From assembly GCA_002269645.1 (NCBI GenBank), contig NIVC01001989.1, positions 1 through 64,000 of the forward strand: a DNA stretch of 64,000 nucleotides, given 5' to 3'. Positions within the stretch are counted from its first letter, which is position 1. The number at the start of each line of letters is the position of its first letter. Below the pieces are notes generated by a model that was not told the origin of the DNA, ran no database searches, and saw only the letters and a program-made list of their open reading frames with translations. The DNA is from Macrostomum lignano (Eukaryota). This document shows, in pieces, positions 5,104 to 60,252 of the stretch. A program made the position numbers and the translations under genes.

Positions 5104-5965
5104 CTGGCTTCCAGCGGCATCAGCGACTCGTACAGGAAATCGTCTCTAGAGTCCACATGTATATAGTAATAATGATTAACATAGTACACAGCCGATAACA
5201 GCCGCATTACCTGTCGCACACCCTACCGCTGAGCGTCATCAGGTAGACTAATCGAACTCGATCGTTCTCCCAGCTATAGGATTCGAACTCGGGACCGTAG
5301 GCAGGTGCGGTATGAGACACAAACAAAGAGCTAGCATTGAGCCCGGTTTGGCTAACCAGATAGTAACCATCTCTAATCGAAGCACCTGTGCAATTATAGC
5401 CAATAGCAGGTCGGCTGCAACCGTTGCCTAGCAACTGAAGACAGACGCAGTCCCGGTTGCTAATGCTAGCCAGCCGATAGCCGGCCGAGCGACATCTGGC
5501 CAAGCATTCGCCTCGCCGGCTCTCTGCCGGCATATTGTTCGTCCAACTGGCCGACGGAATCACTTCGCGCGGATACGGACAACTGTCCGACTGTAGCAGG
5601 CTGTGACAGGAAGTGGCCGGGCCAGAGCCGGACAGTAGTCTAGCCGGACAGGCCTGTCCGACATGCCGCAGCCGGTATGGCAGCCGGCCAGACTCGAAGG
5701 CGCAAGCGACGCGCAGCAGCCGACGCCGGCACTCGGGCTGAGCTGCCCTGTCAACGGCATAGCGCGCCCGCTCGGAGCGGAGCCTGCAGCCATCGTCTGG
5801 CGACTCCGGTCCATCCGGCAGGCGCTCCCATTCGGCCAGCGGCTGTCCGGCGGCTCTGTCCGAATTAAATAACCAGTTTAAATGGCCGAGTAAGCAGAGA
5901 CAGACGACAGACGCTAGTGCTGCTACTAATAGTAGGCCAAGATGCCTGCGTTTTGAGCCGCTCAT
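5104..5965 (-). CDS. XYLT: Peptide O-xylosyltransferase, coding exon 1 (TM anchor, WSC-like Cys domain, start of GT14/Branch domain); 1-bp frameshift near 5211
   Basis: MSGSKRRH-hydrophobic anchor; ECLARC..CVC WSC-like motif. RLVYLMTLSGR, then after a -1 shift VMRLLSAVYYVNHYYYIHVDSR, matches the XYLT RIAF..HGR..AIYHKDHFYYIHVDKR block. Donor AG|GTGAGA at 5103. Confidence 0.9.
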
Positions 5966-9178: not shown

Positions 9179-9328
9179 CTGTTGCGGCGACAAAGACTGG
9201 CACAGCTGGTCAAACTGGCTCTGAGTGAACTCTGGCCGTTGCAGAAGATTATTAGCCGCGTGCACCGCGCATAATAATAGTCGCTGGCGCTCGTGATAGG
9301 GCGCCGCCTGCTGGGCGTGCGAATTCAT
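9179..9328 (-). CDS. JOSD: Josephin-domain deubiquitinase, exon 1
   Basis: YHERQRLLLCAVHAANNLLQ contains the catalytic Cys motif of JOSD1/2. Donor CAG|GTCAGG. Confidence 0.92.
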
Positions 9329-9452
9329 TGCGCTATCTACGGCTGCAGCTGAAGCTGTTAGAGGGCGGCTTGCAGGCTAATGCTTTCTGCTTGACCAGGA
9401 AAAGCAACAGCTGATGTAAGTGATTGAAAATCTAGCGTAGCTCGAACATGTC

Positions 9453-9809
<357 letters not shown>

Positions 9810-10624
9810 TGTATGTATGTATCCATTGACACCTAGTTTGATACAAAAATAACAGAAATACCAAAACAAAGGAAAAATATATATATATATCTTTGCAAAT
9901 TTATTTGCTATCAAGTTTATAAAATATCTGCTCTGCGCTGTGGAAATACAAAAAGCGCGCACACTGAAAGCCGGTCTGTAAAATCAGTGATGAAGTAGAA
10001 TAATTCGCATGTCGCGCGTATATGTGATTAACTGAAAATTTCCACAGTAAATTGGACTCCTACTAACAGTAGGATACATCGATTCTTTTGAACAGTTAAA
10101 TATACACGCAGTCATAAAGCACTGCGCTTTGCGGGGGGGGAGAATTTGCTGAAAGACGCAGCAATACGTAGAAAGAAAAATGTCCGCATTCTATAAATCT
10201 GAGGACACATAAAGCGCAATGAAAACTGCAAGCTAACAATGAGTGCAGCAGCCAGCTACAGCAGATATAAGCTGTATTTAAAATGGCTAAAAAATGTATA
10301 AATAAAGTGACTTTAGAATTAAGAAAAATTAAATGTAATCTTTGTAGACGAGCAGTAGGCTGTAGTACACGCGCTTAAGCAGGTTCAAAATCTTAACAGT
10401 AGTAGCATAGTAAGTACTAAATATCGATTATAAATATTTTTTGGCGGGAATTTCAATAATAAATAAGAAACAAATTATGTATAAAACAATTTCGCACCTA
10501 ACTAGGTCTTGAATAATCCATCTAATTTATAATTGACATATTGATATTGAACTTCATATGCGCGAGGTAAGATAGAATCAAAAAGTTATCGGCAAGTGGG
10601 GGTTTTTGGGGGCTATGAGCGGTT

Positions 10625-11342
10625 CGCTGAAGGACCAATGGGTAGCAGCACCACCCGCTGAAGGACCAATGGCTAGCAGCAACCACCCGCTGAAGGACCA
10701 ATGGCTAGCAGAAACCACCCGCTGAAGGACCAGTGGCTAGCAGCAACCACCCGCTGAAGGACCAATGGCTAGCAGCAACCACCCGCTGAAGGACCAATGG
10801 CTAGCAGCAACCACCCGCTGAAGGACCAATGGCTAGCAGCAACCACCCGCTGAAGGACCAATGGCTAGCAGAAACCACCCGCTGAAGGACCAATGGCTAG
10901 CAGCAACCACCCGCTGAAGGACCAATGGCTAGCAGCAACCACCCGCTGAAGGACCAATGGCTAGCAGAAACCACCCGCTGAAGGACCAATGGCTAGCAGA
11001 AACCACCCGCTGAAGGACCAATGGCTAGCAGAAACCACCCGCTGAAGGACCAATGGCTAGCAGCAACCACCCGCTGAAGGACCAATGGCTAGCAGCAACC
11101 ACCCGCTGAAGGACCAATGGCTAGCAGCAACCACCCGCTGAAGGACCAATGGCTAGCAGCAACCACCCGCTGAAGGACCAATGGCTAGCAGCAACCACCC
11201 GCTGAAGGACCAATGGCTAGCAGCAACCACCCGCTGAAGGACCAATGGCTAGCAGCAACCACCCGCTGAAGGACCAATGGCTAGCAGCAACCACCCGCTG
11301 AAGGACCAATGGCTAGCAGCAACCACCCGCTGAAGGACCAGT
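10625..11342. repeat. 32-bp minisatellite downstream of FLCN stop
   Basis: CCACCCGCTGAAGGACCAATGGCTAGCAGCAA. Confidence 0.97.
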
Positions 11343-11548: not shown

Positions 11549-11698
11549 CTATTGCCTGCACGATTTGATAATCTCTCTACGGGTTAATCCGCTGATACCG
11601 CGAGTCCAGAATTTCAGTACAATCTCGTCGGCTCGTTGACAGCCTAGAGAGGACAGAAAGGCGGTCACTTGGCCATCGGAGAACTGCCGCCTGTGCGC
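11549..11698 (-). CDS. FLCN: Folliculin last exon
   Basis: FLSSLGC..DEIVLKFWTRGIS..* matches FLCN LLKFWMTGLS. Acceptor ttcgcAG. Confidence 0.88.
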   Translation of the reverse strand, partial: AHRRQFSDGQVTAFLSSLGCQRADEIVLKFWTRGISGLTRREIIKSCRQ

Positions 11699-12751: not shown

Positions 12752-12946
12752 CTGCATAAAAGCGTAGGTTTGTCTAGCCCGTTCTAGCCAATCCTCTTTA
12801 GCATTGGCCAGAAGTAGATCGAGAGACTCTTCAGGCAGCACCGGATCGCCCAGCAGGGAGTCAATTTGGCCAATCAGCTGAGCGGCCGGCCGGGCAGGCC
12901 TATTGGTTGTCACTACTAGATCCAGATCGTCTACGGGTATGAAAGC
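12752..12946 (-). CDS. FLCN: Folliculin exon 4
   Basis: LIGQIDSLL..LDLLLANAKEDWLERAR matches FLCN ILNKIEAAL..LKEEWMNKVK. Donor CAG|GTGAAT. The acceptor choice is slightly uncertain. Confidence 0.83.
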
Positions 12947-14132: not shown

Positions 14133-14253
14133 CTGTGCAGCAAGCGCTGACGCGTCAGGCCGACAGTCCAGCAGTAGCATTGGATGGCCCTCGCCGTCGG
14201 CGGCGATCCAATCTGGTAGGCGAGTATCGGCAGTCAGGCCTAACAGGTTGCAC
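14133..14253 (-). CDS. FLCN: Folliculin exon 3
   Basis: R|CNLLGL continues YEEPYR (FLCN YRCNFLGL). Acceptor aaaccAG, donor CAG|GTAAGC. Confidence 0.85.
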
Positions 14254-14866: not shown

Positions 14867-15228
14867 CTATAGGGTTCCTCATATCGTTGCCAGTTGAGCA
14901 GCTCCTGAGAACAGTTGCTAGGCAGTAGGCAACGCAGCAAAGTGAAAAATGATTTAGCCAGTTCAGGCAGCGAAGTTCGAAACACGATCTGATTGCCTGT
15001 GAGCAGGTGATGCAGCAGCAGGCTAAAATTATCAATCGACTGACAAGCTGGCGGCGCCTGGTGCAAACGCTCGCGCAGGTGGCGCAGAGAGTGAAATACT
15101 GCGCTCAGAACCGGGAGCTGGACGCCTTCCCCACCTAGACCGCTGCTGCCGCCACCGTCGCCGCCTCCGACAAGTTTTGTGGGTGTGGGAACCACAGTGC
15201 GAATGCCGTCATCTGCGGAGTCTTCGTC
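14867..15228 (-). CDS. FLCN: Folliculin exon 2
   Basis: FHSLRHL..HLLTGNQIVFR..LRCLLPSNC..YEEPYR matches FLCN FKSLRHM..HVLMGNQVIW..YEEAYR. GT-AG phases fit. Confidence 0.9.
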
Positions 15229-15899: not shown

Positions 15900-16715
15900 C
15901 TCCTCAGCCAGGCACAGCACCGAGTTTAAAGCCAGCTGATCCTCGGTGGGCCTGCCAGGCGCCAGCTCTTCCCGTTGCCAGCCGCGCAGCAGTCGGGCAA
16001 AGCAGGCGTGCAACCGCCTGTAGACGCTTGGATCGCTAGTCAGCTGGGCCAGCGACCTGGCCGGCACGTCAGACCGGCGCATTCGAACCCAGCCGGACCC
16101 GTTGATTCGCGCAGCCCTAGCCGAACAGCCGGCCGATTGCTCAGCTGAGAACTGGGCTGCGGCGGCGTCGCGCAGGCCGGCGATGATCTCGGCCGAGCGG
16201 TTGACCAGCCAAGGCCAGGATTGCAGCAGCATTCGACCGTCGCGCGACAGCGCCAGCACAGAGAACTGGCTAGACAGGCCGCGAGCTTTCACGTCGTCTA
16301 GCTGGAACGGACTGGCGAACACGTGGCAGCCGCCGCCGCCGCCGCCGGCATCGTCGCCAAAGTACATAGCTCCGGTTGGACAGACTTCGCACGAGTGCAC
16401 ACGAAGGCAGGCCTGACGCAGCTGGCTATATAACTGATTGGGAGCGGCTGGGTGCTGGCTGGACACAAGTAGCAAGTCGCCCTGCCAGTCGGCTGTGTAC
16501 ATTGCCAAGGTGTTGGGCGGCATCGAGCGGCAAGCCGGGCATTTCGTTGAAGTCAGACTGGCCGGACCGCCTGGCAGCGCCGAACTGATTGTTGTGCCGT
16601 CCAAGCAGCTGCCGCCTTTGGCTACCGGCAAGCCGGACAGCCTCACCGCCTGGGTGCACATCACCACCGAGGGCCCGTGGTCCTCGCAGAAGTGGGTCAG
16701 CGCCACTAGGCAGTT
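15900..16715 (-). CDS. FLCN: Folliculin exon 1 (no genomic ATG; begins at splice acceptor)
   Basis: NCLVALTHFCEDHGP matches FLCN (M)NAIVALCHFCELHGP. Also RQACLRVHSCEVCP and FQLDDVKARG. Acceptor ccctaaccctctcAG|AAC, donor GAG|GTGAGA. Confidence 0.92.
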
Positions 16716-16735
16716 CTGAGAGGGTTAGGGGTGCG
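16716..16735 (-). promoter_or_regulatory. Branch point, pyrimidine tract and acceptor immediately 5' of FLCN codon 2 (candidate SL trans-splice site)
   Basis: Minus strand reads CCGCACCCCTAACCCTCTCAG|AAC TGC CTA GTG. Confidence 0.7.
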
Positions 16736-16779
16736 GGGGACGCATCGAGGGATGGATTGCAGCTGGGGATAAAGTATCC

Positions 16780-17955
16780 CCAGGCACTAAAATATCCCCA
16801 CAGACTCAATGGGGAAGTGGAGACACTAGAATATCCCTCACGGACTCAATCGGGAACTCGAGGCACTAGAATATCCCCACAGACTCAAGCGGGAACTGGA
16901 GGCACTAGAATATCCCCACAGACTCAAGCGGGAACTCGAGGCACTAGAATATCCCCACAGACTCAATCGGGAACTGGAGGCACTAGAATATCTCCCACAG
17001 ACTCAATCGGGAACTGGAGGCACTAGAATATCCCCCACAGACTCAATCGGGAACTGGAGGCACTAAAATATCCCCACAGACTCAAGCGGGAACTGGAGGC
17101 ACTAAAATATCCCCACAGACTCAAGCGGGAACTCGAGGCACTAGAATATCCCCCACAAACTCAAGCGGGAACTGGAGGCACTAGAATATCCCCCACAGAC
17201 TCAAGCGGGAACTGGAGGCACTAGAATATCCCCACAGACTCAATCGGGAACTGGAGGCACTAGAATATCCCCACAGACTCAAGCGGGAACTCGAGGCACT
17301 AGAATATCTCCCACAGACGCAAGCGGGAACTCGAGGCACTAGAATATCCCCCACAGACTCAAGCGGGAACTCGAGGCACTAGAATATCCCAACGGACTCA
17401 ATCGGGAACTAGAGGCACTAGAATATTCTCACAGATCCAATGGGAAACTGGAGGCACTAGAATATCCCCCACAGACTCAAGCGGGAACTGGAGGCACTAG
17501 AATATCCCAACGGACTCAATCGGGAACTGGAGGCACTAGAATATCCCCACAGACTCAAGCGGGAACTGGAGGCACTAGAATATCCCAACGGACTCAATCG
17601 GGAACTAGAGGCACTAGAATATTCTCACAGATCCAATGGGAAACTGGAGGCACTAGAATATCCCCCACAGACGCAAGCGGGAACTGGAGGCACTAGAATA
17701 TCCCCACAGACTCAAGCGGGAACTGGAGGCACTAGAATATCCCCCACAGACTCAAGCGGGAACTGGAGGCACTAGAATATCCCCCACAGACTCAAGCGGG
17801 AACTGGAGGCACTAGAATATCCCCACAGACTCAAGCGGGAACTGGAGGCACTAGAATATCCCAACGGACTCAATCGGGAACTAGAGGCACTAGAATATTC
17901 TCACAGATCCAATGGGAAACTGGAGGCACTAGAATATCCCCACAGACTCAATGGG
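16780..17955. repeat. 39-40-bp minisatellite upstream of the FLCN acceptor
   Basis: GGCACTAGAATATCCCCACAGACTCAAGCGGGAACTGGA. Confidence 0.97.
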
Positions 17956-19299
17956 GAACTGGGGAAATTCATTTACCTCTAAGTACTAAATAGATGAAAA
18001 TATGCACAAATAAATAATGAAAAGTCTGACATTTTCAGCGCTATTTTTAGTGCCAGGGAAAAATGTATCATGATGTTAGGGTAAGCCTTTTACAATGTGC
18101 TTTAAAGTGTATTAATATATATATATATATGTATATATATTTCAATTATAATGAACAAAATTAGCAAACAAGCGAGCAAAAAGGTGCATATAGCTCATAT
18201 ATAATATTTATTGTAAGCCAACAACCCCTGATGGACACGGCAATTAATAATAATAAAAATGTCTGTCACAAATCACTCGTGACCACTGATAGTGCTCATT
18301 AGCGCAAATATTCTCTAAAAAAATAACAGTATAAGTGTGTGCAATCCTAGGATTAACATACTAAAATGATTACAACACAGACCGATGCGACTACCATACT
18401 GGGCCTAGTCTAACTCAATACGCCAAGCAAATTACAGCATGCATAAATAATTCCGACTATACAGCTTGGTTTTAAAACAGACTCTGACGGCAAGCTTTCA
18501 CAATTTGACAGTGAATGAAGAAGCTCAAAAAGAGACAAAGAAAAGAAAACATACAATTTCATGTCTACAACCTGGGGAAAACATTACTTTTTTAAATTCA
18601 CACGCCAATAACTGCTGGATTTAAACCAATGAAATTCGTTATATTCGTTAGAAACTCGATAATTTCTCAAAAAATAATAACTTCATCCTCGCCGCTCTAC
18701 TTAATACAAGAAGAATCTTAGGAAGCGGAGCTGGAGGAGAATAAAAACTGATTCTGAAATGAAGACAAAAGAGGTTGTAGCAAATATAGCAAGACAATGT
18801 AAATACTAATGGTAGTACCGCCTAAGCCTGTGTGCAACAGGATAGTTGGATAAACTCCAGAGCAAAATTGTCTTGCATTAAAAATAATTATAAAATAGCA
18901 AAATATGACAATTAGCAGCAATAATAATAACAATAATAAATAATATAACAATAATACTCGCACAGGACAACTGATTGTAGGGTTAAGATTGCAACAAAAA
19001 CCACAACAAACTGTATTGCTTGGCAAACCATAACCAGAAAAATGAATACCTGCTGGATGCTTTCACCAGGGAAAGGGGAATAAGCACAAAAAACATAATT
19101 CTTTCTTTCATAATAAAAACGAACGCGGAAGACCCCCTGCTGCGTTAGATAAATAATAACAAATATTAGTGTGGACAATGCAAAACAATAATTTAGTTTC
19201 GCTTCGATATGAAATTTGCGCGTCATGAACTGGGGGTGGGAGGAGGTGGTGCGATTCCACTACTAAATCGAAGCCAATTCTTAACAATAATTGAGCCTC

Positions 19300-32319: not shown

Positions 32320-34720
32320 GCCTTTAAAACCCCGAGGATGCGGGTGGCCTGCTCTGCAGGCCATAGCTAATGGTCTATGGCTTGCGAATAATTTGAATGC
32401 TGCTTCGAAAAATAAGTCTGCATAACCGTAGCTTGCGGCTTTGCCTGCTCAGCAGGCCATGACTATTTTTTTATACAGAAAACATTTGTGAGTCACGGTC
32501 AACGAGTTTTTCTATCTGATGAAGTCATTTTTAATAAGAAACAGTAAAAATCAAGAAGATAAATTGCTATAACGTATAAACAATGTTTAACAGCTAAACA
32601 GCAACAATAACACCTGTTTATAACCAGATGGCATATTGGGTATAACGTCGGTTTCTCGCTCTAAATTATTTTCTTGATTTTCAGAAATTAATACTTTAAT
32701 GCTTTTAAACCTGCGTTACTGATTATTTTCCGGCCTTTCCAGATTAGGAATTCAGAAGCCTGCTTCATTTTCCTGCTTTGGAGTTTGGACTATTACATTG
32801 TGTTACTGTTGACTTTTTACCCTGTGACTTTTTACTTGTTTCTTTTACATTTGTAGACTGTAAGTTTAAAAGAATCCGGAAAAGAATTTAGAGCGGGAAA
32901 CCGAAGTTATGCCGCAAATTGTTTGTCAATTAAGTATGAGCTGCCTTTGGCTTTGAAAACTAGAAAAAATTAAGTTACACCTGAGCGGCATGCCAGTCGG
33001 CAAAGCAGGGGCTGCGCACAGTCCAGGGTTGCCTTCACATGATCCGCAACAGAAGACGGTTTTCTTGGCCTGGCCATTTTTGTAGCACTGCCTGCACCGC
33101 TTCGTTGGTCGGGCCTGCGCTTCGGTGGCTTCAATGCGCTTCAGCGAGTGCTGTTGGTGAGCCACTGCATGGGTTGTATGGCTGCAAGGCAGAGTCCAGC
33201 CTGTCGACACCACCCATAAATATGTTGTACGACACAACTGTCTGTTGCTTCTGCTAGATGACCAGTTCGTTTCGCACGATTCGGTGAACAGGATGAAGTT
33301 GGGCTACGCCTTGCGTGTCAAGGAAGTAAACTTTCTTTAGGCCCGAGCTCTTCCTGTCATCGGCGCGAACTGTGCATGTCAGCATGGTGCTCCGCTGCAG
33401 CAGATACATGTACATGTACATCGCAAGACGATAAGATCCGAACCAGCTATCGCAGAAGACGTGATAACCTAAATCCAATACGTACCTAACTGCCTCCACC
33501 AGGACTTTCTCACTCAGAGACAGCCCCCCACACCCGAGACCTTGACCGAATCGCTCATTCTCAGCTCTACTAGAGTGCACTAAGAAGTTGCTCACGTAAC
33601 CGTATCTAGCTTTGCAAAGACAATACAGTTTGATGCCATATCGCGCTTTCTTGGATGGAATATACTGACGAAACATGACGCGACCCCTGAACAGAACAAG
33701 CTCTTCGTCGACACTAATTTCTTTTTCTGGCATGTACGCACTGCGACATATCTCAGCTACACGCGTAATAAATGGTCTTGCCTTTGCTAGCGGGTCGTTT
33801 CCATCGAAGTTGTTGCAGTCATAGAAGCGCAGCTGGCTACTGATCTGTTGGTACCTGTCCCTTGTCAGGCAAGCGAGTTGTTGGAAGAAACGTGTTGCGT
33901 AGAAATCATCTTTGCTCCAATAGTTGGCGATCTCGGGCTTTTTAACTATTCCCGATATGTAAAGCGACATGGCGACAAACTTCTTCATCTCGTCCACGGT
34001 GACGTCTTTCCACGCAGAGAACCTTTGAGGCAGGTTTGGCATCGATGCTTGTAGCTCGTCGAATTTGCGCCACGCCCGCGCATTGGTCCAAGTGCAGAGC
34101 TGTTGCAGCAGGTCAGCAGTCAGAAACAGCTTGAAAAACGCAGCTGGATCGTCATCGGCAGTCTCTGGCCTCGGCAAGTCAGGATCCATACCAGGCATTC
34201 CTAAAGAACTCGGGCTCTGTATCTGGCCGTTGATCCTGCCCAGCTTCCCGTGTCACCCAAGCATCATTTGGCAAGCCTCCGGCGTCTTCATTTGGCTGGA
34301 GATGCAGGTCCCCCTCTTCTTCATCTTCACCCTCATCCGCTGTTAGCCAGCCTTCCTCCTCCTCTAGTTCGGAGTCGGTATCCGGATCAAAATGCACTTG
34401 AGCAGCCATGACAAACACTGTCCGATACTTGGAAATTATTGCACTAAATAAAGCTGCTGATGATTTAATTAATTAATTGGCACTTGACCTTGATCATATA
34501 GCTTCAAGCTTTCTTGATTTGATGAATTCCACAATTTTACTGTGTCATTTATACCCACCCACCCGTCCATCCACCCCACTCCACTTTATTTTTTGCTTTC
34601 ATGTTTATCCTTTATTGCAACGAGTATAAGCTAATCCGCCTGCTATCGCAGGCTAAGGCTTTGTCAAAAATATGCTGAAATAGTCTATGGCCTGCTCTGC
34701 AGGCCATTCCGCAAGCTACG
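32320..34720 (-). mobile_element. Degenerate piggyBac (PGBD/DDE_Tnp_1_7) element with subterminal inverted/palindromic repeats
   Basis: Transposase fragments from about 34409 to 32975: acidic N-terminus, ISVDEELVLFRGR, KKARYGIKLYCLC, VFCDSWF, YNIFMGGVDRLD and C-terminal CRD RCRQC..CGSC..LC..CF..WH. 32426-32470 is inverted relative to 34678-34720. The right TTAA terminus was not found. Confidence 0.88.
32975..34409 (-). pseudogene. piggyBac transposase pseudogene (frameshifts near 34205, 33260, 33015; internal deletions)
   Basis: The three catalytic-Asp motifs fall in different frames. Segments normally found between GTVR and D..V..LST, and after the YN..GGVD motif (the KW.KK block), are missing. 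Confidence 0.82.
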
Positions 34721-36184: not shown

Positions 36185-36840
36185 TACTATAGTGTCACAT
36201 CCTGCCCCACATTCACACAGTGTCCACTATAACAGCCTCACATTCACACAGTGTCCACTATAATAGCCCCACATTCACACAGTGTTCACTATAATGGCCC
36301 CACATTCACACAGTGTTCACTATAATGGCCCCACATTCACACAGTGTCCACTATAACAGCCTCACATTCACACAGTGTCCACTATAATGGCCCCACATTC
36401 ACACAGTGTCCACTATAACAGCCTCACATTCACACAGTGTCCACTATGATAGCCTCACATTTACACATTTTCCACTATAATAGCCCCAAATTCACACAAT
36501 GTCTACTATAATAGCCCCACATTCACACAGTGTTCACTATAATGGCCCGAAATTCACACAGTGTCCACTATAATGGCCCCAAATTCACACAGTATCCACT
36601 ATAATGGCCCCACATTCACACAGTGTCCACTATAATGGCCCCAAATTTACACAGTGTCCCTATAATGGCCCCACATTCATACAGTCTCCACTATAATGGC
36701 CCCAAATTCATACAGTCTCCACTATAATGGCCTCACATTCACACAGTGTCCACTATGATAGCCCCACATTCACACAGTGTCCACTATAATAGCCTCACAT
36801 TCACACAGTGTCCACTATAATGGCCCCAAATTCACACAGT
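36185..36840. repeat. 31-bp minisatellite upstream of the GT32 acceptor/ATG
   Basis: CCACATTCACACAGTGTCCACTATAATGGCC. Confidence 0.95.
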
Positions 36841-36899
36841 GCCCAGCAAGTACACAACAGAATGCAGTTCTCGCATATCCCGCACTCTTCCCCAAGCAG

Positions 36900-37584
36900 A
36901 TGCGATTAACCTGCCTGCAGTGGCGCCGCCGCAACAGCCAACAGCAGCTCCTGTGGGCGCTACTGACCGGCGCCAGCGCCCTCCTAACCCTGGTCGTCCT
37001 GTTCGGCCCGCTCCAGTCGCCATTTCGCTACTGGGGCCGCCCGCCGCCGCTTGTTCACCAGATGTGCTCGGACCTGGGCAGCATCCCCAGGCAGTACCGG
37101 CCCTACGCCGAGTCCTGGCTGACCAGCCACCCCCGCCACCGCTACCTGCTGTGGACGGACAGCGGGCTGCGCCGCCTGCTGGCCAGGCACTACCCGGAGG
37201 CAGCCAACTGGACCCGGCGCCTGCTGCGCTCCCGCCTGGAGTTCTCCGACGTGGCCCGCTACTACCTGCTGCTGCACTACGGCGGCATCTACGCCGACTT
37301 GGACGTGCGCGCGCGGCGCCAACTGCCGGCCTATCTGGACAGTCTGGCCAACCGAAAATCGGCCGCCTGCGGCTGCTACCTCGGCCAGGAGCCCGTCGCA
37401 CACGCTGTGCTGCTGTTCGGCTTGCCCTGGTTGCCTAGCAACGCGCTAATGGCGTGCTCGCCAGGGCACAGCTTCCTGCGATTCGTCACCGACCTGTTGC
37501 CGCTGTACGTCAGCCGGCGGGCCAGCGCCCTGCCCGGCGAGGGCGAGAGCCGCCTGGGCGGCTTCGGGGCCAACAAGTACACGG
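36900..37584 (+). CDS. Glycosyltransferase family 32 (DXD; SUR1/OCH1-like), exon 1
   Basis: TM anchor, PPLVHQM..SWLTSHPRHRYLLWTD..SDVARYYLLLHYGGIYADLDV..SNALMACSPGHSFL. ATG directly follows a cAG acceptor. Donor G|GTGAGC. Confidence 0.88.
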
Positions 37585-37702
37585 GTGAGCTTGGCCGGCT
37601 GCCAGCCTGCGACTGTTAAGGCCTAAATATCGGCCTTCAAATTTGCATTGGCTGATTACTTCTTAGAAGGGAAACCCTTTTCTATGAGTAAGAAATTTTT
37701 CC

Positions 37703-57540: not shown

Positions 57541-57709
57541 GCAGATATTGGGATTCTTCAAAAAAAGTTTCACAAAAAGTTCGACAAACTTTCAAGTTCG
57601 TTAGTCGCTAAAATATTTCGAGCAGAAAATGGAGACCTACTCGCAACCAAAACAGTTTCTTAAATATCAAAAGCATATCAATAAAATAAAACGGGCAATC
57701 GGAACTCAC

Positions 57710-58333
57710 ATTAGGATTGCACGGAATCAGATGGGTAAGCAAATCGTTAATCTTCTGCTTGGCTTCCTCGGTGCTTAGCGAAGTAAAATTCAAGTCCGCG
57801 AGAAAAGTCTCATTGTCAATCTGGCGCATCACCGGATCGCCCAAACTGCTAATATGGATAGCCGTGATAATGAAGAACACTAACACGCCAAATTGCAGTA
57901 CAAACGGTAGCAGAGGGAACACCAGACAGGACATCATATGGCCTAGGCAGTGGCTAGTGTGAGAGATCAAAGCTATGGCAATGCAGATTCGCCGGCGCAG
58001 CCAGATCAGCAGGAACAGCACAATGATGAACAGACTACCGGACACGATAGCTAGAAACAGCCAGGTGCGAGACAGGTGCAAATAATAGCCAAAATCGAAA
58101 GTTAGCTTTGTGTTCTTCTCCAACGAATCCGATTGGCCGCGCAAGATAATGTACTTGTACACTGTGAAAGCTGTGGCGGCCGCGAATAGCAGTACAAACA
58201 GTACTATGGATAGGATTACAATTGGCTTGGCCAGGTAGCGGAGCAGAAGCACCCATAGCAGACTGACAGCCACAGCTAGCAGGCAGCCACCGACTATCCA
58301 CTGCCACGACTGCACCACGTCTTCGAATAGCGC
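57710..58333 (-). CDS. SLC44A: SLC44A exon (TM2-5)
   Basis: LFEDVVQSWQWIV..LLLRYLA..LRRRICIAIALI. 624 nt, phase 0/0. Confidence 0.93.
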
Positions 58334-58344
58334 CTACGGGGCCA

Positions 58345-58750
58345 GGGAGATGGCGGTGTGGTTGGGGACTGGCAGGGAGATGGCGGTGTGGTTGGGGACT
58401 GGCAGGGAGATGGCGGTGTGGTTGGGGACTGGCAGGGAGATGGCGGTGTGGCTGGGGACTGGCAGGGAGATGGCGGTGTGGCTGGGGACTGGCAGGGAGA
58501 TGGCGGTGTAGCTGGGGACTGGCAGGGAGATGGCGGTGTGGCTGGGGACTGGCAGGGAGATGGCGGTGTGGCTGGGGACTGGCAGGGAGATGGCGGTGTA
58601 GCTGGGGACTGGCAGGGAGATGGCGGTGTGGCTGGGGACTGGCAGGGAGATGGCGGTGTAGCTGGGGACTGGCAGGGATGGCGGTGGCTGGGGACTGGCA
58701 GGGAGATGGCGGTGTGGCTGGGGACTGGCAGGGAGATGGCGGTGTGGCTG
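58345..58750. repeat. 30-bp minisatellite filling most of an SLC44A intron
   Basis: GGCTGGGGACTGGCAGGGAGATGGCGGTGT. Confidence 0.97.
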
Positions 58751-58795
58751 AATAAGTTCTAGGTTCTCGAACAGCAACGCAGCAAAAGAGCTCAC

Positions 58796-59288
58796 CTGCA
58801 GATAGCTGTACACCTTGATAAACCTAGCCATAGTGTTGGTACCCCTTCGCACGGTGTCCGCCCCGATACTGCGATTGTTAGCGCTGGTAACATTGTTAGG
58901 CAGAGTGGTCATGCTGCTGACAACCCGGCCGCCGACACCCTTCAGCAGTTTTGGCAGGCAGCGGCCAAGCATGCTCACGGACGGCAGGGTGTAGGGTGCG
59001 CACAAGTGATTCTGAACCAGGTCACGGATGCTCAGGGACTGGTACTCAGGTTCCATGGCGTTGCGCCCGCCCAGACAGACCATCTTCTCCCGTTCGGCAG
59101 CAATTGTTGTTTTGACTGGGCCATTCAAATCGCCGCCAGTCTCAGCCAGGTGAGCCGGCAACCAGGCCCACATCCTGGTTGGGCAGCTGGCTACGCACAC
59201 CTGCGGCGTTGGGCAGCCCAGCTGGACTGCGGCCAGGCCCATGCGGGCGCACACGGTCAGATCGAAGAACACCAGGCGGGTCCGGTTT
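58796..59288 (-). CDS. SLC44A: SLC44A exon (extracellular Cys-rich loop)
   Basis: LVFFDLTVC..CPTPQVCVASCP..CAPYTLPS..GRCLP. Donor CAG|GTGAGC. Confidence 0.9.
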
Positions 59289-59319
59289 CTAAGGATGCGG
59301 GAGTGCGGAATGCAAACTG

Positions 59320-60252
59320 GTGCTGTACATTCAGCATGTGAACTGCTGTACATTCAGCATGTGGACTGCTGTACATTCAGCATGTGAACTGCTGTACATT
59401 CAGCATGTGGACTGCTGTACATTCAGCATGTGAACTGCTGTATATTCAGTTTGTGAACTGCTGTACATTCAGCATGTGAACTGCTGTACATTCAGCATGT
59501 GGACTGCTGTACATTCAGCATGTGAACTGCTGTACATTCAGCATGTGGACTGCTGTAGATTCAGCATGTGAACTGCTGTATATTCAGTTTGTGGACTGCT
59601 GTACATTCAGCATGTAGACTGCTGTACATTCAGCATGTGAACTGCTGTATATTCAGCATGTGAACTGCTGTATATTCAGTTTGTGGACTGCTGTACATTC
59701 AGCATGTGGACTGCTGTACATTCAGCATGTGAACTGCTGTATATTCAGCATGTGAACTGCTGTATATTCAGTTTGTGGACTGCTGTACATTCAGCATGTG
59801 GACTGCTGTACATTCAGCATGTGAACTGCTGTATATTCAGTTTGTTGACTGCTGTACATTCAGCATGTGGACTGCTGTACATTCAGCATGTGAACTGCTG
59901 TATATTCAGTTTGTGGACTGCTGTACATTCAGCATGTGGACTGCTGTATATTCAGTATGTGGACTGCTGTACATTCAGCACGTGGACTGCTGTACATTCA
60001 GCATGTAGACTTCTGTACATTCTGCGATCAGACTGCTGTACATTCAGCATGTAGACGGCTGTACATTCTGCGATCAGACTGCTGTACATTCAGCATGTAG
60101 ACTGCTGTACATTCAGCATGTAGACTGCTGTACATTCAGCATGTAGACTGCTGTACATTCAGCATGTGAGCTGCTGTACATTCAGCATGTAGACTGCTGT
60201 ACATTCAGCATGTGAGCTGCTGTACATTCTGCGATCAGACTGCTGTACATTC
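59320..60252. repeat. 23-bp minisatellite
   Basis: CTGCTGTACATTCAGCATGTGGA. Confidence 0.97.

What the first reader, a model, noticed from the sequence alone, without database searches (positions are those of the whole stretch)
16690..16740. Folliculin lacks a genomic start codon; its initiator AUG may come from a spliced leader
Seen: the minus strand reads ...CCCTAAC CCTCTCAG|AAC TGC CTA GTG GCG CTG ACC CAC TTC TGC GAG (N-C-L-V-A-L-T-H-F-C-E). This aligns residue-for-residue with FLCN M-N-A-I-V-A-L-C-H-F-C-E except for the Met, which would fall exactly on the acceptor AG. The nearest strong upstream donor (AG|GTAAAT near 17976) would bring an in-frame TAG and no ATG. Established: flatworm spliced leaders end in a conserved AUG, which in Schistosoma can act as the initiator Met. 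Inference: SL trans-splicing supplies FLCN's only correct start codon, making this mTORC1/Rag regulator strictly dependent on trans-splicing. Any cis-spliced isoform would start about 17 residues later and lose the conserved HFCE motif.
Basis: partly seen in the sequence, partly recalled or inferred. Interest (0 to 1): 0.85.

Follow-up and report, generated by a model that had tools for sequence, protein, structure and literature searches.

The report
Folliculin start codon supplied by spliced leader
In the flatworm Macrostomum lignano the folliculin gene has no start codon of its own and almost certainly gets its AUG from the trans-spliced leader RNA. Flatworms are already known to do this for dozens of genes, so this is a new example of a known trick, not a new mechanism.

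Summary
On the minus strand a CAG acceptor (16718-16716) is followed at 16715 by AAC TGC CTA GTG..., which aligns with human folliculin from residue 2. An in-frame TAA lies four codons upstream. The first genomic in-frame ATG is codon 19, past the conserved HFCE motif.

The window is Macrostomum lignano contig NIVC01001989.1. The deposited protein (PAA61881.1, "partial", 547 aa) starts with that Asn, at the first base after the AG. Two other genomic copies have the same junction and also lack a Met.

M. lignano has a 35-nt spliced leader ending ...TTGCATG, followed by a GTAAG donor. Joined at 16715, it puts its only AUG in frame at the position where 72 of 80 folliculin homologue representatives have their Met. 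The published annotation trimmed the leader and set 5' ends from leader-containing reads, which explains the Met-less model. No credible upstream cis exon ending in ATG was found.

I saw no read joining the leader to this exon, so the evidence is convergent but indirect (confidence about 0.8).

The mechanism has been known since Cheng et al. 2006 in Schistosoma, and Macrostomum workers already call the leader's ATG a start codon. This is a new member of a known kind, of modest interest.

The parts
16716..16718 (-). CAG 3' splice acceptor directly before the first folliculin codon; proposed spliced-leader trans-splice site
   Evidence: sequence. It has the same CAG form as the four internal cis acceptors of the gene. 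It is identical in all three genomic copies. The deposited CDS starts at the next base.
16719..16740 (-). Pyrimidine-rich tract (18 of 22 bases), including CTAAC (16728-16724), a branch-point-like motif
   Evidence: The branch-point role is inference only; the A is only 9 nt from the AG.
16725..16727 (-). In-frame TAA that closes the reading frame four codons upstream of the first folliculin codon
16743..16745 (-). In-frame genomic ATG followed by five codons and the TAA; cannot start folliculin
15900..16715 (-). Folliculin exon 1 (272 codons), beginning N-C-L-V-A-L-T-H-F-C-E with no start codon
   Evidence: Exon model rebuilt from PAA61881.1.
16659..16661 (-). First in-frame genomic ATG (codon 19), downstream of the conserved HFCE motif; the fallback start if the leader AUG is absent or skipped
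14867..15228 (-). Folliculin exon 2
14133..14253 (-). Folliculin exon 3
12752..12946 (-). Folliculin exon 4
11549..11698 (-). Folliculin exon 5, including the stop codon
16719..21802 (-). Presumed outron or intergenic region between the stop of the upstream same-strand Forkhead gene and the acceptor. It is rich in tandem repeats and has no consensus donor preceded by an open in-frame ATG
16782..17962 (.). 39-bp satellite, 30 copies, ending about 65 nt upstream of the acceptor. The unit contains no ATG
   Evidence: It spans about 650 nt in the other two gene copies.

Best explanation
The folliculin pre-mRNA of Macrostomum lignano is trans-spliced at the CAG acceptor at 16718-16716. The 35-nt spliced leader (CGGTCTCTTACTGCGAAGACTCAATTTATTGCATG) is joined directly to AACTGCCTAGTG.... 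The leader's 3'-terminal AUG, its only AUG, becomes the first AUG of the mRNA. It is in frame and gives a 548-residue folliculin starting M-N-C-L-V-A-L-T-H-F-C-E, the canonical N-terminus of the family.

Shown:
- the junction sequence, the upstream in-frame stop and the lack of a genomic start;
- the species, and its AUG-terminated leader;
- the Met-less deposited gene models that begin at the acceptor;
- the conservation of the Met position in the family.

Inferred:
- that the leader is actually joined at this acceptor;
- that ribosomes start at the leader AUG.
For: 1. Sequence: CAG|AAC at 16715, TAA four codons upstream, first genomic in-frame ATG at codon 19.
2. Homology: N1 aligns with residue 2 of human FLCN. 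Of 80 homologue representatives carrying the motif, 72 have Met exactly one residue before that position.
3. Species: the window equals M. lignano NIVC01001989.1.
4. Leader: it ends in ATG followed by a GTAAG donor. About 30% of all genes and 45% of human-conserved genes are trans-spliced, and CAG is the core of the trans-acceptor motif (PMC8629364).
5. Deposited models: PAA61881.1 is 'partial' and starts at N1, the first base after the AG. If the ORF caller (TransDecoder) reports a 5'-partial ORF only when no in-frame stop lies upstream in the transcript (my knowledge of the tool), the supporting transcript cannot reach back to the TAA, and cannot include the P-S-Q codons. Its 5' end is then within 2 nt of the acceptor. 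PAA74221.1 and PAA63135.1 start 6 and 9 nt further in, and UniRef A0A1I8HPQ5 also starts at N1. None has an upstream exon. The pipeline trimmed leader sequences and cut gene 5' ends at peaks of leader-containing reads (PMC5730564).
6. Three genomic copies share an identical junction from -43 onward and have intact ORFs, with 8-14 synonymous against 5-9 non-synonymous codon differences per pair. So this is neither an assembly error nor a pseudogene.
7. No GT[AG]AG donor with an open in-frame ATG lies in the 5,087 nt upstream. The four ATG|GT sites are non-consensus, and one is destroyed in copy L003.
8. Precedent: in S. mansoni the leader AUG is in frame in 28% of trans-spliced transcripts, and more than 40 cDNAs need it (Cheng 2006, as cited in PMC9851317). 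Macrostomum genome authors call the leader's final ATG the translation start codon (PMC10468722).
Against: - No read, EST or contig joining the leader to this exon was retrieved. Exact-sequence look-ups of M+protein were negative. The protein word-index searches, a metagenome scan and paper supplements gave nothing.
- The six bases before the junction (TCTCAG) do not match the published [T/C]TNCAG motif exactly. That motif is found at only 44% of sites.
- The annotated 5' ends of the three copies differ by 0, 6 and 9 nt, so the annotation is not perfectly clean.
- The leader AUG has a weak context (U at -3, A at +4), so some ribosomes may skip it.
- Flatworm acceptors are often shared between cis- and trans-splicing (PMC12582326), so a cis isoform may coexist.
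Confidence: 0.8

Rival explanations
1. A cis-spliced upstream exon that ends in ATG (phase 0) supplies the start codon, and the annotation simply missed it.
For: Four ATG|GT sites lie 1.7-3.2 kb upstream, at 18397, 19031, 19694 and 19874. Three are kept in all copies. Flatworm acceptors can serve both cis- and trans-splicing.
Against: None of the four has the GT[G/A]AG donor found at 65% of M. lignano introns or the GTRA form of this gene's own donors. The 18397 site loses its GT in copy L003, which still has an intact ORF. Three genome-guided, RNA-seq-based models and the older UniRef model all lack such an exon and are 5'-partial. About 5 ATGGT are expected by chance in 5 kb, so four sites mean nothing.
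Confidence: 0.07
2. Translation does not use a leader AUG. It starts at the genomic ATG of codon 19, or at a near-cognate codon (GTG at codon 4, CTG at codon 6), giving a shortened or Met-substituted N-terminus.
For: ATG at 16661-16659 has a better context (G at -3) than the leader AUG. The leader AUG context is weak.
Against: Codons 1-18 match the family consensus residue for residue, for example P0026 begins MDAVVALCHFCEQHGPSVVMCTQ. That is not expected of untranslated sequence. HFC[ED] is close to invariant among the homologue N-termini listed. The leader AUG would be the first AUG, 32 nt from the cap, which should be long enough for recognition (my knowledge).
Confidence: 0.08
3. Artefact: an assembly error removed the ATG, or this copy is a decaying pseudogene.
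For: The assembly is PacBio-based (PMC8629364), and I recall that PacBio errors are mostly indels. A neighbouring gene in this window does carry a 1-bp frameshift relative to the other copies.
Against: Three separately assembled contigs have the identical junction. All three keep ORFs of 547-549 codons, with an excess of synonymous changes once the number of sites is considered.
Confidence: 0.02

Closest known systems
Schistosoma mansoni mRNAs that use the spliced leader's 3'-terminal AUG as initiator Met (Cheng, Cohen, Ndegwa and Davis, J Biol Chem 2006)
   Same: A flatworm leader ending in AUG is joined at an acceptor so that the AUG is in frame, and the recipient ORF has no usable AUG of its own. 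More than 40 such cDNAs are reported.
   Different: The species is different (a free-living macrostomorph, not a trematode), the leader sequence is different, and the gene is different. Here use of the AUG is inferred from sequence and annotation, not shown by translation assays.
slORFs: open reading frames created by leader-borne start codons in nematodes, ascidians and trypanosomes (slORFfinder, PMC9851317)
   Same: The leader provides the start codon for the recipient mRNA.
   Different: Per PMC9851317, slORFs are new ORFs, and outside flatworms the leaders carry mainly non-canonical (NUG) start codons. Here the leader AUG restores the canonical N-terminus of a conserved protein.
Folliculin (FLCN, BHD) of other eukaryotes, e.g. 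human FLCN in PDB 6NZD and 6ULG
   Same: The same two-domain protein (Pfam Folliculin plus Folliculin_C) and the same N-terminal M-N-x-hydrophobic-hydrophobic-A-L-x-H-F-C-E pattern.
   Different: Predicted proteins of other organisms start with Met at this position. For those predicted from genome sequence that Met must be genome-encoded, though I did not inspect their loci. In M. lignano that codon is absent from the genome, and the exon starts at codon 2.

Membership tests
Spliced-leader-AUG-initiated mRNA (flatworm type, Cheng et al. 2006) | The organism has a spliced-leader RNA whose leader ends in AUG immediately before the donor | tested here: met
   Species identified as M. lignano. The leader ends ...TTGCATG, followed by GTAAG (PMC8629364). 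No leader gene lies in the window itself.
Spliced-leader-AUG-initiated mRNA (flatworm type, Cheng et al. 2006) | The leader is actually joined to this gene at the acceptor before the ORF | tested here: inconclusive
   Indirect evidence only: the deposited 5'-partial CDS starts at the first base after the AG, from a pipeline that trims leaders and cuts at leader-read peaks. No junction read was retrieved.
Spliced-leader-AUG-initiated mRNA (flatworm type, Cheng et al. 2006) | The leader AUG is in frame with the ORF, and no genomic in-frame AUG can give the conserved N-terminus | tested here: met
   The acceptor is at a codon boundary, TAA lies four codons upstream, and the first genomic ATG is codon 19. 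The Met position is conserved in 72 of 80 homologues.
Spliced-leader-AUG-initiated mRNA (flatworm type, Cheng et al. 2006) | Ribosomes initiate at the leader AUG | not testable with these tools
   This needs ribosome profiling, N-terminal proteomics or reporter assays.
Folliculin (FLCN) | Folliculin N-terminal (longin-type) and Folliculin_C (DENN-type) domains | tested here: met
   PF11704 E=7e-31 and PF16692 E=4e-27. PDB FLCN chains match at E=4e-38.
Downstream gene of an M. lignano operon (Ustyantsev and Berezikov 2021 criterion) | Same-strand upstream gene within 1 kb after subtracting repeats | tested here: not met
   The Forkhead CDS ends 5,087 nt upstream on the same strand. Tandem repeats account for about 2.2 kb of that, leaving about 2.9 kb. 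Transposon content and the Forkhead 3' UTR were not subtracted, so the true figure is smaller.

The most novel reading that the evidence does not exclude
Full-length folliculin in M. lignano can be made only from trans-spliced mRNA. The balance between trans-spliced and unprocessed or cis-spliced transcripts, or leaky scanning past the weak leader AUG, would then set the ratio of full-length protein to a form lacking the first 19 residues and the HFCE motif. That would tie control of the folliculin/mTORC1 nutrient-sensing pathway (assigned to folliculin from general knowledge) to trans-splicing activity, for instance in stem cells, where 85% of specific genes are trans-spliced.
Probability: 0.07. 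Interest if true: 0.6.

Novelty: new member of a known kind. Interest (0 to 1): 0.25.

Why it matters
There are three practical consequences:
- It corrects a gene model. The deposited M. lignano folliculin proteins are not truncated; each is complete apart from the leader-encoded Met and, in two copies, the first 2-3 residues.
- Any transgene, rescue or knock-in design for this gene must supply an ATG or keep the trans-splice acceptor.
- It shows that genome-only annotation in leader-using flatworms will systematically mark such genes as partial or give them wrong N-termini.

Biologically it adds a conserved gene to the list of mRNAs that depend on the leader AUG, in a free-living flatworm far removed from Schistosoma. 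That supports the view that the conserved 3' AUG of flatworm leaders is functional. It does not reveal a new mechanism.

Tried and rejected
- The protein word-index search returned nothing for exon 1 or for its N-terminal 123 residues, although identical proteins are in the collection. The exhaustive representative search was what identified the species.
- Rfam on the whole window: no hits. The last 16 nt of the leader (up to 2 mismatches) are not in the window.
- Direct junction evidence was sought in several ways, all negative:
  - exact look-ups of M+PAA61881.1, M+A0A1I8HPQ5, the version starting at codon 19, and intron-1-retained products with and without the leader Met;
  - a metagenome scan with the first 38 nt of exon 1.
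- Supplements of Wudarski 2017, Grudniewska 2018 and the 2025 MBE flatworm leader paper hold no entry for these gene ids or for folliculin. Ustyantsev 2021 has no supplement held. Wasik 2015 is not held. No paper contains both 'folliculin' and 'spliced leader'.
- I tried to use gene-name suffixes (Mlig009567.g2) as proof of a polycistronic unit. I dropped this because name prefixes come from clustering of transcriptional units, and the adjacent Josephin gene carries other prefixes.
- Two folliculin transcripts from the Logan public read-archive assemblies, with Cys at position 3 (P0076, P0080), were fetched as possible flatworm relatives. They have 5' untranslated regions of 326 and 777 nt and come from unknown organisms. 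P0076 resembles an acanthocephalan protein. So other flatworm folliculin genes were not checked.
- A tiny intron that would remove the TAA after the 16745 ATG was rejected. ATG is not followed by GT, and the only GT nearby would give a 26-nt intron and the wrong frame.

Full report
**Observation.** On the minus strand the window reads ...tcccccgcacccctaaccctctCAG|AAC TGC CTA GTG GCG CTG ACC CAC TTC TGC GAG.
- The AG is at 16717-16716 and the first exon base is 16715.
- In frame upstream are CCC TCT CAG, preceded by TAA at 16727-16725.
- An in-frame ATG at 16745-16743 is closed by that TAA.
- The first in-frame genomic ATG after the acceptor is codon 19 (16661-16659).

The translated exon is folliculin. 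tblastn with human FLCN puts query residue 2 at 16715 (E=5e-36). phmmer against PDB chains 6ULG_L and 6NZD_H aligns N1 with human N2. Pfam finds Folliculin and Folliculin_C. The only slip is that the fallback ATG is 18 codons downstream of N1, not about 17.

**Where the window comes from.** An exhaustive HMMER search found one 99%-identical protein. Cluster look-up named it as Macrostomum lignano folliculin: PAA74221.1, PAA61881.1 and PAA63135.1, all "partial", plus UniRef A0A1I8HPQ5. The contig carrying PAA61881.1 (NIVC01001989.1, assembly GCA_002269645.1) is 100% identical to the window over 25,167 bases, and window coordinates equal record coordinates.

**The gene.** I rebuilt the deposited model as five exons on the minus strand: 16715-15900, 15228-14867, 14253-14133, 12946-12752 and 11698-11549. 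That is 547 codons plus a stop. All internal acceptors are CAG and the donors are GTGAG, GTAAG or GTGAA.

M. lignano carries a recent genome duplication. Two further copies of the locus (L001, L003) have the same gene order (L001's 10-kb flank does not reach the Forkhead gene) and are identical from 43 nt upstream of the acceptor into the exon. All three ORFs are intact. Between copies there are 8-14 synonymous and 5-9 non-synonymous codon differences. Since non-synonymous sites are about three times as numerous, that indicates purifying selection. Assembly error and pseudogene are therefore unlikely.

**What the deposited models say.**
- None of the four database proteins begins with Met. PAA61881.1 and the UniRef entry start at N1, PAA74221.1 at L3 and PAA63135.1 at V4.
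- In this window the CDS starts at the first base after the AG.
- The models come from a genome-guided, RNA-seq-based assembly. Leader-containing reads were trimmed and mapped, and transcriptional units were cut at the resulting peaks. ORFs were then called with TransDecoder (PMC5730564).
- If TransDecoder reports a 5'-partial ORF only when no in-frame stop lies upstream in the transcript (my knowledge of the tool), a 5'-partial ORF beginning at N1 means the transcript does not reach the TAA 10 nt upstream, and does not even include the P-S-Q codons. Its 5' end is then within 2 nt of the acceptor.
- An mRNA end that coincides with a splice acceptor, with no upstream exon in any of three copies, is the signature of trans-splicing.
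- RNA-seq was mapped end-to-end, so reads carrying the leader would not map. That probably explains why the other two models begin 6 and 9 nt further in. This point is inference.

**The leader.** M. lignano has one 35-nt spliced leader, CGGTCTCTTACTGCGAAGACTCAATTTATTGCATG, followed in its gene by GTAAG. About 30% of genes and 45% of genes conserved with human are trans-spliced. The enriched acceptor motif is [T/C]TNCAG (PMC8629364). Here the six bases are TCTCAG: the CAG core and a pyrimidine-rich tract are present, but the match is not exact.

The leader has a single ATG, at its 3' end. Joined at 16715 it gives ...UUGCAUG|AACUGCCUAGUG. The first AUG of the mRNA is then in frame, and the product starts M-N-C-L-V-A-L-T-H-F-C-E.

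Among 80 homologue representatives (clusters at 50% identity) that carry the N-terminal motif, 72 have Met at exactly that position, 69 of them as the annotated initiator. Codons 1-18 match the family consensus closely, so they must be translated. The genome offers no start for them.

**Alternatives.**
- *Cis-spliced upstream exon ending in ATG.* The 5,087 nt between the upstream same-strand Forkhead gene and the acceptor contain no GT[AG]AG donor preceded by an open in-frame ATG. The four ATG|GT sites have donors GTTTG, GTTGT, GTTTG and GTAGT. The one at 18397 loses its GT in copy L003.
- *The sequence next to the acceptor.* A 39-bp satellite occupies 16782-17962. Its unit has no ATG. In copy L001 the satellite comes within 43 nt of the acceptor.
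- *Operon.* After subtracting tandem repeats the distance to Forkhead is still about 2.9 kb. The published operon criterion (under 1 kb) is therefore not met with what I could subtract. Whether folliculin has its own promoter or is read through from Forkhead stays open.
- *Other starts.* Initiation at codon 19 or at near-cognate codons cannot be excluded as a minor route, because the leader AUG has a weak context.

**What is missing.** I could not obtain a read or cDNA with the leader joined to this exon.
- Exact look-ups of Met-prefixed products were negative, as were one for a product starting at codon 19 and one for the genomic GTG-start ORF.
- The protein word-index tool returned nothing.
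- A metagenome scan found nothing.
- The supplements of the relevant papers do not list the gene.

The conclusion therefore rests on convergent indirect evidence. I put it at about 0.8.

**Comparison with what is known.**
- All reported flatworm leaders end in AUG (PMC12582326).
- In Schistosoma mansoni the leader AUG is in frame with 28% of trans-spliced transcripts, and more than 40 cDNAs need it to start translation (Cheng et al. 2006, as summarised in PMC9851317).
- The authors of the M. cliftonense and M. hystrix genomes state that the leader's final ATG is a translation start codon. They deliberately left it on reads to avoid annotation problems (PMC10468722).
- No paper in the library mentions folliculin together with a spliced leader.

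This is therefore a previously unremarked instance of a known mechanism: a new member of a known kind. Its value is mainly in correct annotation and construct design. It also adds a conserved gene from a distant flatworm lineage to the evidence that the leader AUG is functional. The idea that trans-splicing regulates folliculin output is not excluded, but nothing here supports it.

Noticed in passing
window 16782-17962 (also L001 about 9304-9951 and L003 about 9296-9925): A 39-bp satellite (unit AGGCACTAGAATATCCCCACAGACTCAAGCGGGAACTGG on the + strand) lies directly upstream of the folliculin acceptor. It has 30 copies here but spans only about 650 nt in the two other gene copies. In L001 it comes within 43 nt of the acceptor. 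If the outron is transcribed, the satellite is transcribed with it.
   Followed up: partly
window 5222/5223, minus strand; exon 1 of the xylosyltransferase-like gene (ATG at 5965): Relative to both other genomic copies, this copy lacks one A. The frame shifts (...TLSGRVCDR* instead of ...TLSGRGVRQVMRLLSAVYYVNHYYYIHVD...). The deposited product here is 502 aa, starting at the internal ATG at 5207, against 926-929 aa in the other copies. This is either an assembly indel or a real disabling mutation in one copy.
   Followed up: partly
L001:10001, L002:10001 and L003:10001 (window 16715): The three deposited folliculin models start at different residues (L3, N1, V4) although the DNA is identical there. 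The annotation of 5' ends at trans-splice sites is therefore inconsistent between copies.
   Followed up: partly
window 28440 down to about 5200, minus strand: Four genes lie on the same strand in the same order: Forkhead, folliculin, Josephin (ubiquitinyl hydrolase) and a xylosyltransferase-like gene with a Pfam Branch domain. The order matches wherever the fetched loci reach: L001 does not extend to Forkhead. The spacers of 2-5 kb are full of tandem repeats. Whether any of the genes are co-transcribed is unknown.
   Followed up: partly
window 9453-9809 and 10625-11340: (GTA)119 lies about 125 nt upstream of the Josephin ATG (9328). A 32-bp array of 22 copies lies just downstream of the folliculin stop codon, in the likely 3' UTR or spacer.
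   Followed up: no
window 33254-34198, minus strand: A 314-aa ORF matches the piggyBac-type transposase domain DDE_Tnp_1_7 (E=1e-49). It is probably a transposon remnant or a domesticated copy.
   Followed up: no
window 36777-37619 (+) and 57608-59353 (-): There are ORFs with a DXD glycosyltransferase domain (Gly_transf_sug) and a choline-transporter-like domain. The adjacent ORF at 58334-59353 ends in a run of (PVPS[HY]TAISL)-type repeats.
   Followed up: no
proteins P0112, P0113, P0142, P0144 and P0109: Several folliculin predictions from unidentified organisms begin inside or just after the conserved N-terminal motif (for example MVVMTTQ..., MVFCTQ..., MHGPTS...). Their true first codons may also be missing from the gene models. 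I could not tell whether any come from leader-using taxa.
   Followed up: no
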